A DNA stretch of 64,000 nucleotides, taken from positions 308,149 to 372,148 of the forward strand of contig NW_019217913.1 in NCBI RefSeq assembly GCF_002571385.2, in the 5' to 3' direction. The notes under the pieces were generated by a model. The model was not told the origin of the DNA and made no database searches. It saw only the letters and a program-made list of their open reading frames with translations. Below, one piece after another: positions 18,979 to 21,216 of the stretch. Both the position numbers and the translations under genes were made by a program. This DNA is from Stylophora pistillata (taxonomy: Eukaryota). The first letter of the stretch is position 1, and each line of letters opens with the position of its first letter.

Positions 18979-21216
18979 TTAGATATCAATAATATCGCTA
19001 TTAAGGTAGATAGGAGGTTCATGCTCATCAGGTCTCAGGGCAGGGCCACCGCTGTAGTTCATCAACCTTTGTTGGAACGGTAGGTTGACATAGAATGGTT
19101 CGTTTTCCGATAAATTGTGAACTTCCTCGTTATCATTGCTCGTAGTTCTTGCCTTCGTATCCGACGCACTAAAGGGTATTTCGCTGTAAATTTCGTTGCC
19201 TTCTTCATCGAGGTTGGAGTAAACTTCCTCATTATTTTTACTTGCTGTTGTCGCTTGGCGCTTATGTTCTTCATTCTTCCCACCGGCTTTCTTCTCTTGC
19301 TTCGGATCAGGGCAACCGGCAGTGGCTCCGTTTCCTTTGTGAAGAATGCTTCGAAGTTGGGAAATTATATCTGACGAGTCATCTTTTTCTCTCACTTCTT
19401 GGGTGGAGGCACATTCGTCGAGGAGCTGGCCATTTTCTTTATCGATCGGTTTCTCTTTTTCAACGCTCACTGACGTAACTACCAGTTCATATTCAGAGGT
19501 GTCATCTTCATTAAGACTTAGCTTGTTGCAGTTTTGATTACTCTTCGATAATGCACCTGTTTTTTCCTGAGCAACATTGAACACAATTCTGTCCTGCTTT
19601 ACGACGCCTCGCTCATGCCCGCTAGGATCCTCCGAATTATGCGGAAAGGACATCCGTTGAGCCTTTTTTCCCTTTCCTTTATAGTTTTCATTAATGTTAT
19701 TCTCTTGTTTACCCGCAGGGTAGCTATGTCTCACAGCAGTGTTAGCTCTTTTATCACGGTTTGGAGTCTCGCTTGTTCTGTTCCTAAGGAGGCCTCGTAG
19801 TTGAGAAATAACACCAGTTGATTCATTGTTTTGCGTCATCTCTTGGGTGTTGGCCGATGGGGACATTTTCTTGCCCCCATTGTCTGAATCCACTATACCC
19901 ACCAACTCATAGTTTGGAATGCTCCCATCATTTGCACCGGATTTATTATCGGAATAACCCGCGTCGTTGGCAACTTGGGCATTGTTTCCTTCATTGGTTT
20001 TCTTCTTGGACTTAACTCCTGTCTTAGGGGGAGCTGCGGTGTGTTGTTGCGTGAGTTGTTGTAGATCACACTCGTCAAGAACCGCAGGCATGTTCTTTCT
20101 GTCTGCCTCCTGGCCAGGTCCGTTGAAGTGGAATTCAACTTCAGTGGGATTTTTTATATGAGGTGAAGGATTAAACGTTTTCTCTTTTCCCTCGGCGTTC
20201 ACTCCACGGCACATTTTCTTCGAGAGGCGTGGTTTTGGCTTTGGCCAAGTTTCACTCGCTGTACCATTCTCAGAAATTTCGCTCTTTGGAGGTCTCACCA
20301 CGACTATACCTTCTTGAGACTTGGTTGGTGCTTTGCAGCAATTTTCTGATGTATCTGTAGGACCCTCTTTATTTAGCACCTTTTCATTACTCTTCTCTGT
20401 GTCTTCCTTCAGTCCTCCTTGAGTTCGGATTTCTTTCTGTATATCTTCACCCTGGGGGCTCGTTACGTTTCTTAGTTCTGATGAAGCTTCATTTGTTTGC
20501 TTCGTATTCTCAATCAGAACCACACATTCAAGTTTGCCCGTTTCAGTAGCCTCTGAATTTTTCGGAATGTCGTTTCCATTCTGTGTACCAATCTCAATTT
20601 CAGCATTTTTATCTACTTGTCTCTCATCGTGGTCCGCAAAGGGATTTAAGTGATCCGCACTGCCAACACTTACGTAGATTCTTCTTTTGTCTTGCTGCGC
20701 GTCCGTCGCGGGGCGTTCACTTGAAGAGACTCCCACAAATGCAGGGTTATCATCCACTATTTGTAGATATGATGCCACCGGGATCGATGCATCTGGAATT
20801 ATTTCCTCTTGGCTCTTTGATTCTTCGTCTGTTTCTTTGACATCTCCTTGAGATGGACAGGCAGATTGTTCTTCATCCGGACGGGGTCCATCTTCATCGT
20901 CGTAAACAAGTGCATAAGCGAAACCTCTGGGGATATCTTTCCAAGCGTTATTTTCGTCGGAGCCTTCCGCTTGTTGGTTGAATATTACTATAGAATTGGA
21001 GACAGCGTTTGGAGTTTCGTGTTGAAACTCTGTCAGTTGTGTTAAGGGTTCCTCGCTTGGTGCTAGTTTGCAAAGAACGTTCCACCCGTTGGATACGCTG
21101 TCCACACGCTTTTGTATTTTTCTCAGCCAGACAACCAGAAACAACACAAGCGGCAGTAACAGAGTTAAGAAACAGAGCAGAGCTAAGGATAGATGAAAAA
21201 TAACTTTCTCATCCAT
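18979..21216 (-). CDS. Large type III transmembrane adaptor-like protein with C-terminal ITAM (745 aa)
   Basis: Uninterrupted 2.2-kb ORF with an in-frame TAA directly before the ATG. N-terminal TM, low-complexity polar tail, YSNL-x7-YSEI, YVNL, YLNS, SEYELV, PKPKPR. N-terminus is alignable with the 25511 protein. Confidence 0.85.
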   Translation of the reverse strand: MDEKVIFHLSLALLCFLTLLLPLVLFLVVWLRKIQKRVDSVSNGWNVLCKLAPSEEPLTQLTEFQHETPNAVSNSIVIFNQQAEGSDENNAWKDIPRGFAYALVYDDEDGPRPDEEQSACPSQGDVKETDEESKSQEEIIPDASIPVASYLQIVDDNPAFVGVSSSERPATDAQQDKRRIYVSVGSADHLNPFADHDERQVDKNAEIEIGTQNGNDIPKNSEATETGKLECVVLIENTKQTNEASSELRNVTSPQGEDIQKEIRTQGGLKEDTEKSNEKVLNKEGPTDTSENCCKAPTKSQEGIVVVRPPKSEISENGTASETWPKPKPRLSKKMCRGVNAEGKEKTFNPSPHIKNPTEVEFHFNGPGQEADRKNMPAVLDECDLQQLTQQHTAAPPKTGVKSKKKTNEGNNAQVANDAGYSDNKSGANDGSIPNYELVGIVDSDNGGKKMSPSANTQEMTQNNESTGVISQLRGLLRNRTSETPNRDKRANTAVRHSYPAGKQENNINENYKGKGKKAQRMSFPHNSEDPSGHERGVVKQDRIVFNVAQEKTGALSKSNQNCNKLSLNEDDTSEYELVVTSVSVEKEKPIDKENGQLLDECASTQEVREKDDSSDIISQLRSILHKGNGATAGCPDPKQEKKAGGKNEEHKRQATTASKNNEEVYSNLDEEGNEIYSEIPFSASDTKARTTSNDNEEVHNLSENEPFYVNLPFQQRLMNYSGGPALRPDEHEPPIYLNSDIIDI

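What the first reader, a model, noticed from the sequence alone, without database searches (positions are those of the whole stretch)
19177..19221. Canonical-spacing ITAM in the 745-aa protein
Seen: EEVYSNLDEEGNEIYSEI is an acidic lead-in followed by YxxL-x7-YxxI, and it is followed by YVNL and YLNS. Known: YxxL/I-x6-8-YxxL/I recruits tandem-SH2 Syk/ZAP-70 kinases, and pYxN binds Grb2-family SH2. The same tail has an ITIM-like SEYELV. Inference: one chain could combine ITAM-chain and LAT-like functions.
Basis: partly seen in the sequence, partly recalled or inferred. Interest (0 to 1): 0.75.

Follow-up and report, generated by a model that had tools for sequence, protein, structure and literature searches.

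The report
Coral membrane adaptor with ITAM-like tail
A stony-coral gene encodes a membrane-anchored, disordered protein whose tail carries conserved tyrosine docking motifs like those of vertebrate immune adaptors; the "ITAM" is real as a pattern but is a recent add-on to an older Grb2-type site.

Summary
Window 19177-19221 (minus strand) encodes YSNLDEEGNEIYSEI, residues 666-680 of a 745-aa protein.

The gene is real. PolyA RNA contigs from corals cover it, a GT..AG intron sits in the 5' UTR, and a stop codon directly precedes the ATG. The product is therefore an 8-residue outer stub, one membrane helix and a roughly 710-residue disordered tail.

It belongs to a family found here only in stony corals: 18 hits among 1.84 billion proteins, no Pfam match, and every named member labelled "hypothetical". 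Y666 is the only invariant column in a 17-sequence family alignment. It sits in a family-wide IY-x-N-[ILV]-D motif, one of three or four YxN (Grb2-type) sites in the tail.

The second ITAM tyrosine occurs only in the gene's own subclade: 6 of 7 representatives, always at x7. The first half reads YxxV in four of them. Both halves are canonical L/I only in this species and its closest relative.

The genome encodes Syk-like, Grb2-like and Src-like proteins, so readers exist.

Verdict: a LAT/NTAL/PAG-like adaptor design (analogous, not homologous). Syk docking is possible but unproven.

The parts
18979..21216 (-). Complete coding sequence, 745 aa plus stop, in a single coding exon
   Evidence: ORF. 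In-frame TAA at 21217-21219 directly before the ATG. One RNA contig covers it without interruption (record 9). Start and C-terminus are conserved in orthologues.
19177..19221 (-). ITAM-like pair YSNL-x7-YSEI (res 666-680). Y666 is the family-wide invariant tyrosine; Y677 is specific to the subclade.
19081..19092 (-). YVNL (res 709-712), a YxN site inside the conserved island EPFYVNLPFQQ
18997..19008 (-). YLNS (res 737-740), the terminal YxN site. Y737 and N739 are nearly invariant across the family.
18982..18996 (-). C-terminal DIIDI (res 741-745). Most family members end in x-D-[IV]. A PDZ-ligand role is possible but is inference only.
19480..19497 (-). SEYELV (res 574-579), ITIM-like. It lines up with the acidic N/S-Y-D/E-x-I/V-T motif seen in clade I.
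21124..21192 (-). Single membrane helix (about res 9-31). The outer stub is MDEKVIFH. RKIQKR follows on the inside.
   Evidence: Kyte-Doolittle 19-residue windows above 1.6 occur only at starts 3-17; the maximum elsewhere is 0.86. The N-out/C-in topology is inferred from the positive-inside rule.
21239..23114 (-). Intron in the 5' UTR, 1876 nt, GT..AG on the minus strand
   Evidence: Joint 21238->23115 in contigs of 4 of 4 polyA RNA runs (table 5). Polypyrimidine tract and AG at 21239-21240.
23115..23698 (-). Non-coding first exon, as far as the contigs reach
   Evidence: table 8 (records 8, 9, 18)
18068..18978 (-). 3' UTR, up to a splice donor at 18068 that joins 17600
   Evidence: Loose ends at 18068 in 3 of 4 runs. 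The loose-end letters match 17571-17600.
25511..27163 (-). Tandem paralogue, 550 aa. Same N-terminal design and a YxN tail, with its own non-homologous ITAM-like pair at 26606-26650.

Best explanation
The gene encodes a transmembrane adaptor-like scaffold found so far only in stony corals. It has an 8-residue outer stub, one membrane helix and a disordered cytoplasmic tail of about 710 residues that carries short conserved motif islands.

The core signalling module sits in the last ~80 residues. It is a set of tyrosines in acidic contexts that read YxN: Y666-S-N-L, Y709-V-N-L and Y737-L-N-S.

Inferred mechanism: a Src-family kinase phosphorylates these sites, and they then recruit the SH2 domain of the coral Grb2 homologue, as in vertebrate LAT and NTAL.

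In this gene's own subclade a second tyrosine (Y677-S-E-I) was added seven residues after the first site. That creates an ITAM-like pair which might additionally dock the tandem SH2 domains of the coral Syk homologue, or a Src/Csk-type SH2.

Shown here: the gene model, the predicted architecture, the conservation pattern, and the presence of candidate writer and reader genes.

Inferred: topology, phosphorylation and every binding partner.
For: Gene model:
- Spliced polyA RNA contigs show a GT..AG joint in 4 of 4 runs.
- A stop codon sits directly before the ATG.

Architecture:
- There is one hydrophobic segment only.
- The Atlas model has mean pLDDT 0.36.
- No Pfam family matches at E<=10.

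Family:
- The word search found 3 clusters. The profile search of 1.84 billion representatives found 18 hits at E<=0.001.
- Named members are Desmophyllum pertusum, Porites lobata, Montipora foliosa and M. capricornis, all labelled hypothetical or uncharacterized.
- This genome holds only two members, both in this window.

Motifs:
- Y666 is the only invariant column of 17 aligned sequences. Y737 and N739 are nearly invariant.
- 53 of 89 tail tyrosines are YxN, against 5 of 154 elsewhere.
- Site A has N at +2 in 12 of 17 sequences.

Readers and writers in this genome, each searched exon by exon:
- Syk-like: two SH2 exons best match SYK (E 3.5e-45 and 1.3e-36). Kinase exons with HRDLAARN and DFGMS lie 3-8 kb downstream on the same strand.
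- Grb2-like: SH3-SH2-SH3 order, and the C-terminal SH3 exon best matches GRB2 at 2e-23.
- Src-like: an SH2-kinase ORF best matches SRC at 5.9e-148.

Design parallels: NTAL is described as a 6-residue outer peptide, a membrane helix, CxxC and five YxN Grb2 motifs (PMC2196071, passages). Language-model look-alikes are SCIMP, PAG, LIME1 and poxvirus A36R, all scoring below 0.9, so they are leads only.
Against: - Nothing shows phosphorylation, membrane localisation or binding.
- There is no juxtamembrane CxxC. The first cysteine after the helix is C49, so the raft targeting typical of LAT, NTAL and PAG is not supported.
- No sequence homology to any vertebrate adaptor family was found. The only hits were sub-threshold matches to LST1 over the membrane helix in two clade-I members, at E 0.026 and 0.18.
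- The family rows are related, so the YxN binomial figure (6e-28) overstates independence.
- Tyrosines as a class are not significantly more conserved than other residues among the three close orthologue clusters: 9 of 14 against 41% overall, p = 0.07.
- The Atlas look-alike scores are in a range that shuffled proteins reach a third of the time.
- The Grb2 SH2 exon on its own matched SHP2 as well as GRB2.
Confidence: 0.6

Rival explanations
1. It is a true ITAM. Doubly phosphorylated Y666/Y677 docks the tandem SH2 domains of the coral Syk homologue, so this chain starts Syk signalling and also scaffolds Grb2.
For: - The pattern is canonical, with an acidic lead-in.
- Both tyrosines and the exact x7 spacing are kept in 6 of 7 representatives of the gene's clade, inside an otherwise fast-evolving tail.
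- The island is among the best conserved stretches.
- A Syk-like gene with both SH2 domains and a kinase domain exists in this genome.
- The literature states that cnidarians have Syk/ZAP-70 homologues, from which its authors infer conserved upstream ITAM-containing receptors (PMC5978004, passages). ITAMs have been proposed in Hydractinia Alr tails (PMC9546547, passages).
Against: - The first half is YxxV in 4 of the 6 that keep the pair.
- The pair is broken in D. pertusum: x6, with T at +3.
- It is absent in 8 of 16 family representatives, including all clade-I corals and the tandem paralogue.
- The first tyrosine is explained independently as the family's YxN site.
- There is no acidic residue in the membrane helix and no outer cysteine, unlike CD3-zeta, FcR-gamma and DAP12 (the comparison features are recalled).
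- The paralogue's own ITAM-like pair is not conserved either. In D. pertusum it reads YMSL-x8-YASP.
Confidence: 0.25
2. The pair is a PAG/Cbp-like double dock. The first site (YSNL here, YSSV or YANV in relatives) binds a Csk-type SH2 domain. The second (Y-S/C-E-I, close to YEEI) binds a Src-family SH2 domain. Kinase and its inhibitor are brought together for feedback control.
For: - A review states that Cbp/PAG carries Src SH2 motifs (YEEI/V) and one Csk SH2 site (YSSV), and can bind both at once (PMC3492796, passages).
- The 48-52% identical orthologue cluster reads exactly YSSV at site A.
- Site B is Y-[SC]-E-I in all 6 that have it.
- A Src-like kinase gene is present.
- PAG is among the Atlas look-alikes, at score 0.81, which is a lead only.
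Against: - No Csk homologue was looked for in this genome.
- YSSV occurs in only one of the clusters.
- N at +2 in 12 of 17 sequences points to Grb2-type rather than Csk-type reading.
- There is no homology to PAG.
Confidence: 0.15
3. The tyrosines are unphosphorylated YxxPhi sorting signals for clathrin adaptors, or other non-SH2 short motifs. On this reading the protein is a trafficking or structural membrane protein, not a signalling scaffold.
For: YSNL, YSEI and YVNL all fit YxxPhi. The protein also has many conserved islands without tyrosine, such as ECVVLIE, a twice-repeated ISQLR and PKPKPRLSKK.
Against: YxxPhi does not explain the strong preference for N at +2. It also does not explain YLNS/YSNN at the terminal site, where +3 is not hydrophobic. 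The acidic lead-ins (EEVY, NEIY) resemble kinase substrates, though that comparison is recalled.
Confidence: 0.1
4. The ITAM pattern is a chance by-product of two independently useful tyrosines in one conserved island, and the spacing itself has no function.
For: A short conserved island without indels keeps its spacing automatically. The L-to-V change at +3 is tolerated. One lineage lost a residue and the second motif while keeping all the YxN sites.
Against: A per-protein chance of 0.3-0.8%. The x7 spacing is kept in 6 of 7 clade representatives even though the intervening residues change: DEEGNEI versus DNSNDDL or DESNDDL.
Confidence: 0.3

Closest known systems
Vertebrate transmembrane adaptor proteins LAT and NTAL/LAB (LAT2)
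   Same: A very short outer peptide, one N-terminal membrane helix, and a long unstructured tail whose main recognisable features are tyrosines, several of them YxN (PMC2196071). Three YxN sites are clustered at the C-terminus.
   Different: No detectable sequence homology. No juxtamembrane CxxC. The tail is several times longer than I recall for LAT and NTAL. It has an extra ITAM-like pair and a conserved x-D-[IV] C-terminus. The gene has a single coding exon, whereas the NTAL paper describes 11 exons for LAT and NTAL.
PAG/Cbp (Csk-binding transmembrane adaptor), also LIME and SCIMP
   Same: The same overall design. YSSV-type and YxEI-type motifs lie side by side in some orthologues (PMC3492796). 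The conserved C-terminal end could be a PDZ ligand, as in PAG; the PAG feature is recalled.
   Different: No homology and no palmitoylation motif. The dominant motif is YxN. Csk binding is untested.
ITAM signalling chains (CD3-zeta, FcR-gamma, DAP12) and invertebrate ITAM receptors (Drosophila Draper, Hydractinia Alr proteins)
   Same: YxxL-x7-YxxI with an acidic lead-in, in a predicted cytoplasmic tail. The outer part is very short, as in the vertebrate chains. A Syk-family kinase is present in the same genome. PMC9546547 uses the consensus Yxx[I/L]x6-9Yxx[L/I].
   Different: No charged residue in the membrane helix and no outer cysteine. The tail is about 710 residues, with the motif 635 residues from the membrane. 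The pair is not conserved across the family. There is no ectodomain, unlike Draper and Alr.
Poxvirus A36R and cytomegalovirus UL135
   Same: They are among the nearest language-model look-alikes, at 0.85 and 0.83. As I recall, they are membrane-anchored disordered proteins that recruit SH2/SH3 adaptors.
   Different: The scores are in the range reached by shuffled sequences, and there is no alignment. This is a resemblance of type only.

Membership tests
ITAM (motif class) | Two Yxx[L/I] units separated by 6-8 residues | tested here: met
   YSNL-x7-YSEI at residues 666-680
ITAM (motif class) | Acidic residue shortly before the first tyrosine | tested here: met
   E-E-V-Y. E-[EQ]-[VI]-Y in the orthologues.
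ITAM (motif class) | Lies in the cytoplasmic part of a membrane protein | tested here: inconclusive
   There is a single hydrophobic segment at the N-terminus, with RKIQKR after it and MDEK before it. N-out/C-in topology is inferred from the positive-inside rule. No topology predictor or experiment was available.
ITAM (motif class) | Both units and the spacing conserved in orthologues | tested here: inconclusive
   Both tyrosines at x7 are kept in 6 of 7 representatives of the gene's clade. L/I at both +3 positions occurs in only 2 of these 7, and 4 have V in the first unit. The pair is degenerate in D. pertusum and absent in 8 of 16 family representatives.
ITAM (motif class) | A tandem-SH2 Syk-family kinase is available in the organism | tested here: met
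   At G000:C104, two SH2 exons best match SYK N-SH2 and C-SH2. Tyrosine-kinase exons lie downstream on the same strand.
ITAM (motif class) | Dual phosphorylation and cooperative binding of tandem SH2 domains | not testable with these tools
   This needs peptides and proteins.
ITAM signalling chains (CD3-zeta / FcR-gamma / DAP12 type) | Acidic residue in the membrane helix for pairing with a receptor (feature recalled) | tested here: not met
   Residues 9-31 (LSLALLCFLTLLLPLVLFLVVWL) contain no D or E.
ITAM signalling chains (CD3-zeta / FcR-gamma / DAP12 type) | Outer cysteine forming disulphide-linked dimers (feature recalled) | tested here: not met
   The outer stub MDEKVIFH has no cysteine. 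The first cysteine is C15, inside the helix.
Transmembrane adaptor proteins (LAT/NTAL/PAG/LIME/SCIMP design) | Very short outer peptide plus a single N-terminal membrane helix | tested here: met
   A stop codon lies directly before the ATG and the intron is in the UTR, so no further N-terminal exon is possible. There is one hydrophobic segment.
Transmembrane adaptor proteins (LAT/NTAL/PAG/LIME/SCIMP design) | Juxtamembrane CxxC palmitoylation motif | tested here: not met
   Cysteines are at 15, 49, 120 and further on, with no CxxC. C49 is not conserved in clade I, which reads VYSKL.
Transmembrane adaptor proteins (LAT/NTAL/PAG/LIME/SCIMP design) | Tail with several tyrosine motifs for SH2 proteins, typically YxN | tested here: met
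   This protein has 3 YxN sites. Across 16 family members, 53 of 89 tail tyrosines are YxN.
Transmembrane adaptor proteins (LAT/NTAL/PAG/LIME/SCIMP design) | Sequence homology to a vertebrate family (Pfam PAG, LIME1, SCIMP and others) | tested here: not met
   This protein gave 0 Pfam families at E<=10. None of 10 further family members gave a hit above cut-off.
Transmembrane adaptor proteins (LAT/NTAL/PAG/LIME/SCIMP design) | Inducible tyrosine phosphorylation and Grb2 binding | not testable with these tools
   Only the presence of a Grb2-like gene was shown.

The most novel reading that the evidence does not exclude
Stony corals independently evolved a LAT/NTAL-like transmembrane adaptor family. 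In one lineage, this gene's subclade in the suborder Vacatina, the oldest Grb2-type tyrosine was converted into a working ITAM by gain of a second tyrosine at x7. A single chain would then both recruit Syk and scaffold Grb2. That would make it a candidate for the upstream partner of cnidarian Syk that the literature infers but does not name, and the first adaptor of this design described outside vertebrates.
Probability: 0.2. Interest if true: 0.7.

Novelty: new variant of a known kind. Interest (0 to 1): 0.5.

Why it matters
Cnidarians have Syk, Src-family kinases and Grb2, but few of the membrane proteins that feed them are known. One paper notes that Syk/ZAP-70 homologues occur in cnidarians and infers conserved upstream ITAM-containing receptors, none of which it names (PMC5978004, passages). 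ITAMs have so far been proposed in Hydractinia Alr tails (PMC9546547).

Transmembrane adaptors of the LAT/NTAL/PAG type are, to my knowledge, described only in vertebrates. My two text searches for such proteins in invertebrates or corals returned nothing relevant in their listings.

This family offers:
- a concrete, expressed, coral-wide protein to test for phosphotyrosine signalling in coral immunity or symbiosis;
- a natural series for asking what an ITAM adds: clades with and without the second tyrosine, L or V at +3, and one broken case.

All of this rests on sequence analysis alone.

Tried and rejected
- Pfam scans of this protein at E<=10 and of 10 relatives at E<=1 gave no family above cut-off. 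The sub-threshold LST1 hits cover only the membrane helix, so I do not count them.
- The Atlas structure search gave TM-scores of 0.11-0.18 on a model with pLDDT 0.36, which is meaningless.
- The genome-wide PF07714 search scored only 133 of 1820 candidates and missed the Syk kinase exons. I found them by reading the locus instead.
- The Grb2 SH2 exon alone could not separate GRB2 from SHP2. The C-terminal SH3 exon and the SH3-SH2-SH3 order settled it.
- The best PDB hit of the Syk-like kinase exon was an entry named EGFR (9p9u_A, 4.3e-27), ahead of ZAP-70 and SYK. I cannot explain that row. I rest the Syk call on the two SH2 exons.
- The paper search with 'LAT' was swamped by 'latitude'. 'ITAM' plus 'scleractinian' gave 8 papers. 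Judged from titles and abstract starts only, none is about a coral ITAM protein.
- I considered a cleavable signal peptide instead of a membrane anchor. I rejected it by inference: the hydrophobic run is about 23 residues and is followed by RKIQKR.
- I considered an N-terminal extension from upstream exons. The in-frame TAA rules it out.
- I did not name the species. Run labels say 'coral metagenome' and the named relatives are stony corals.
- I did not ask for supplements. Figures S1-S2 of PMC5978004 (which cnidarians have Syk) and the SI of PMC9546547 may bear on the comparison.
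Full report
THE OBSERVATION

The minus strand of window 19177-19221 translates to YSNLDEEGNEIYSEI.

Shuffling the protein's residues produces any Yxx[LI]-x6-8-Yxx[LI] in 0.8% of 20,000 shuffles, and in 0.3% for x7 only. That is rare for one protein. By my own arithmetic, not a tool result, it is not rare across a proteome, so the pattern needs support from context and conservation.

THE GENE

Sequencing runs labelled 'coral metagenome' or 'organism A' hold the stretch: 20 of 24 listed runs, 6 of them on record as RNA, from 7 studies. I laid contigs of four polyA RNA runs from two studies on 18001-24000.
- All four show one joint, 21238->23115. It skips 1876 nt whose ends read GT..AG on the minus strand.
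- One 3436-nt contig carries the upstream exon, the joint and the whole ORF without interruption (record 9).
- The acceptor lies 22 nt before the ATG, and the codon directly before the ATG is TAA. No upstream exon can therefore extend the protein.
- All orthologues start at the same methionine and end with the same DIIDI/DIIDV.

The 745-aa protein is thus complete and sits in one coding exon. No run differs from the window inside the motif (tables 3 and 4).

ARCHITECTURE

Only one hydrophobic segment exists. Kyte-Doolittle windows above 1.6 start at residues 3-17, and the maximum elsewhere is 0.86. It is preceded by MDEKVIFH and followed by RKIQKR.

By the positive-inside rule (inference), the protein has an 8-residue outer stub, one membrane helix and a cytoplasmic tail of about 710 residues. 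The ESM Atlas holds the sequence with mean pLDDT 0.36. Pfam finds nothing at E<=10.

THE FAMILY

The word-based search found three clusters:
- 99% identity;
- 69-71% identity, with 433 members;
- 48-52% identity.

Because that left the protein open, I ran the full profile search. It found 18 representatives at E<=0.001 among 1.84 billion, 16 of them at E<=1e-10.

Members that carry a name are Desmophyllum pertusum (three adjacent loci, OS493_006579 to 006581), Porites lobata, Montipora foliosa and M. capricornis. All are labelled hypothetical, unnamed or uncharacterized. Desmophyllum belongs to suborder Vacatina and Porites to Refertina.

This genome has exactly two members, both in this window: this gene and a 550-aa paralogue at 25511..27163.

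A maximum-likelihood tree of 17 sequences, rooted at the midpoint for drawing only, splits into two groups.
- Clade I has 8 rows, including the Porites and Montipora clusters.
- Clade II has 9 rows. It consists of the paralogue pair (P0036 + P0040) and a 7-row clade that holds this gene (support 100/100).

WHAT IS CONSERVED

In the 17-sequence alignment the only invariant column is Y666. The only nearly invariant columns are Y737 and N739. Two rows lack their N-termini, which prevents invariance there.

The C-terminal alignment shows these sites.

| Site | Motif | Conservation |
|---|---|---|
| A | E-x-I-Y-x-N-[ILV]-D | Tyrosine in 17 of 17. N at +2 in 12 of 17. At +3: I in 10, V in 5, L in 2. 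|
| C | IYVNQ | Present in many members, absent in this gene |
| D | PFYVNL / PIYANx | Conserved in most members |
| E (terminal) | PIYxN | Followed by an x-D-[IV] end in most members |

Across 16 members, 53 of 89 tyrosines in the last 100 residues are YxN, against 5 of 154 elsewhere. The asparagine frequency in those tails is 0.11. The rows are related, so the nominal p-value overstates the case. Even so, the oldest and strongest feature of the tail is a cluster of Grb2-type YxN sites, and the first tyrosine of the 'ITAM' is one of them.

THE SECOND TYROSINE (site B)

P0033 is truncated, so 16 rows cover this site.
- It is present at exactly x7 as Y-[SC]-E-I in 6 rows: this gene, P0002, P0003, P0026, P0027 and P0028.
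- It is present at x6 with a non-canonical +3 in 2 rows: D. pertusum (YCQT) and P0036 (YSKM).
- It is absent in 8 rows: all seven clade-I rows that cover the site, and the window's paralogue.

Within the gene's own 7-row clade the pair is kept in 6. Both halves are canonical (L/I) only in this species' cluster and the 69-71% cluster. The other four read YSSV, YANV or YSHV.

A strict ITAM scan of 18 further family sequences found one only in the window's paralogue, at a different place (YMSLKGAKADTYANL). The D. pertusum orthologue does not keep it (YMSL-x8-YASP).

The pair is conserved in close relatives, weakened by L-to-V, broken in one lineage and absent in the wider family.

READERS AND WRITERS IN THIS GENOME

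I searched each gene exon by exon. I neither built nor searched joined models.
- **Syk-like.** Among 50 SH2 matches, two full SH2 exons lie 1.2 kb apart on one strand of contig C104. They best match human SYK N-SH2 (3.5e-45) and C-SH2 (1.3e-36), with ZAP-70 next. Exons with GHGNFG, HRDLAARN, DFGMS and SDVWSYG lie 3-8 kb downstream on the same strand. One of them matches ZAP-70 (9.8e-23) and SYK (1.5e-20), behind one entry named EGFR that I cannot explain.
- **Grb2-like.** A locus in SH3-SH2-SH3 order lies on C30. Its C-terminal SH3 exon best matches GRB2 (2e-23). Its SH2 exon alone was ambiguous. A second such locus lies 60 kb away.
- **Src-like.** An SH2-kinase ORF on C414 best matches SRC (5.9e-148).

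The machinery for either reading exists. This shows opportunity, not use.

MECHANISM

The best-supported reading has confidence about 0.6. The protein is a membrane-anchored phosphotyrosine scaffold whose core is the YxN cluster, working like LAT or NTAL. NTAL is described as a 6-residue outer peptide, a membrane helix, CxxC and five YxN Grb2 motifs (PMC2196071, passages).

The ITAM-like pair is a later addition in one subclade. Three readings of that pair remain open and are not exclusive:
- Syk tandem-SH2 docking, about 0.25.
- A PAG/Cbp-like Csk-plus-Src double dock, about 0.15. Cbp is stated to carry YEEI/V Src sites and one YSSV Csk site (PMC3492796, passages), and one orthologue cluster reads exactly YSSV.
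- Two independent sites whose spacing is incidental.

Against membership in the ITAM-chain family: there is no acidic residue in the helix, no outer cysteine, and a very long tail.

Against membership in the vertebrate adaptor families: there is no homology and no juxtamembrane CxxC.

The resemblance is therefore one of design. Language-model look-alikes (A36R 0.85, SCIMP 0.84, UL135 0.83, PAG 0.81, LIME1 0.81) point the same way. They lie in a score range that shuffled proteins often reach, so I treat them as a lead only.

NOVELTY

Already in print:
- ITAM and ITIM motifs in cnidarian receptor tails (Hydractinia Alr, PMC9546547, passages).
- Syk in cnidarians (PMC5978004, passages).

I found nothing in print on a coral transmembrane adaptor family of this kind. 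The searches were made, and I judged them from listings only. Every named database member is uncharacterized.

I rate this a new variant of a known kind, of moderate interest. The ITAM claim as written is plausible but not established.

EARLIER NOTES OF THIS SCAN, ON THE SAME WINDOW
- One note said the two adaptors are old paralogues conserved at the helix and at motif islands. I confirmed this.
- One note reported a second ITAM in the paralogue. It is present but not conserved.
- One note on another piece of this genome mentions a receptor with an ITAM. I did not test it.

Noticed in passing
window 17192-17600 (-), with the donor at 18068: RNA contigs in 3 of 4 runs splice from 18068, inside this gene's 3' UTR, to 17600. 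An ATG 16 nt after that acceptor opens a small protein: MDVQDLT, then a membrane helix, then a short tail. It is another protein with a tiny ectodomain. Either its first exon overlaps this gene's 3' UTR, or the two are read through together; contigs cannot tell which.
   Followed up: partly
window 26606-26650 (-): The 550-aa tandem paralogue has its own canonical ITAM-like pair, YMSLKGAKADTYANL, at a non-homologous position. The chance figure is 1.9% per protein. The pair is not kept in the Desmophyllum pertusum orthologue, which reads YMSL-x8-YASP.
   Followed up: yes
window 15898-16510 (-) and 16001-18000: Three overlapping ORFs of 171-199 aa in all three minus-strand frames encode repetitive Leu/Ser/Cys-rich text, which points to a tandem DNA repeat. 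The 16-22 kb region also shows strong AT skew, +0.16 then -0.16 to -0.18.
   Followed up: no
window 19780-19806 and 19342-19368 (-), residues 471-479 and 617-625: A motif [VI]ISQLR[GS][LI]L occurs twice in the tail and is conserved in the three close orthologue clusters. ECVVLIE (res 230-236) and a PKPKPRLSKK basic patch (res 325-334) are further conserved islands without tyrosine.
   Followed up: no
G000:C30:637721-642575 (+) = L012: A second locus in SH3-SH2-SH3 (Grb2-like) order lies about 60 kb from the first. Its N-terminal SH3 and SH2 exons are very similar in type to the first. I did not check it against solved structures.
   Followed up: partly
proteins P0029, P0034, P0059 (Desmophyllum pertusum OS493_006579, 006580, 006581): The public models 006580 (118 aa, matching only the family's N-terminus) and 006579 (lacking the N-terminus) look like one gene split in two. 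It lies next to 006581, which is the paralogue type. The tandem pair therefore seems conserved between two coral families.
   Followed up: partly
window 19328, 20152, 20300, 18613: All four RNA runs carry the same other letter at these places, for example C>G at 19328 inside the coding sequence. This is probably a difference between the reference individual and the sampled colonies. It matches the 99% identical cluster P0001.
   Followed up: no
PDB search of L001:2165-2311 (-): The best match of the Syk-like kinase exon was an entry named Epidermal growth factor receptor (9p9u_A, 678 aa, 4.3e-27), ahead of ZAP-70 and SYK. This is unexplained; the entry may be a fusion construct.
   Followed up: no
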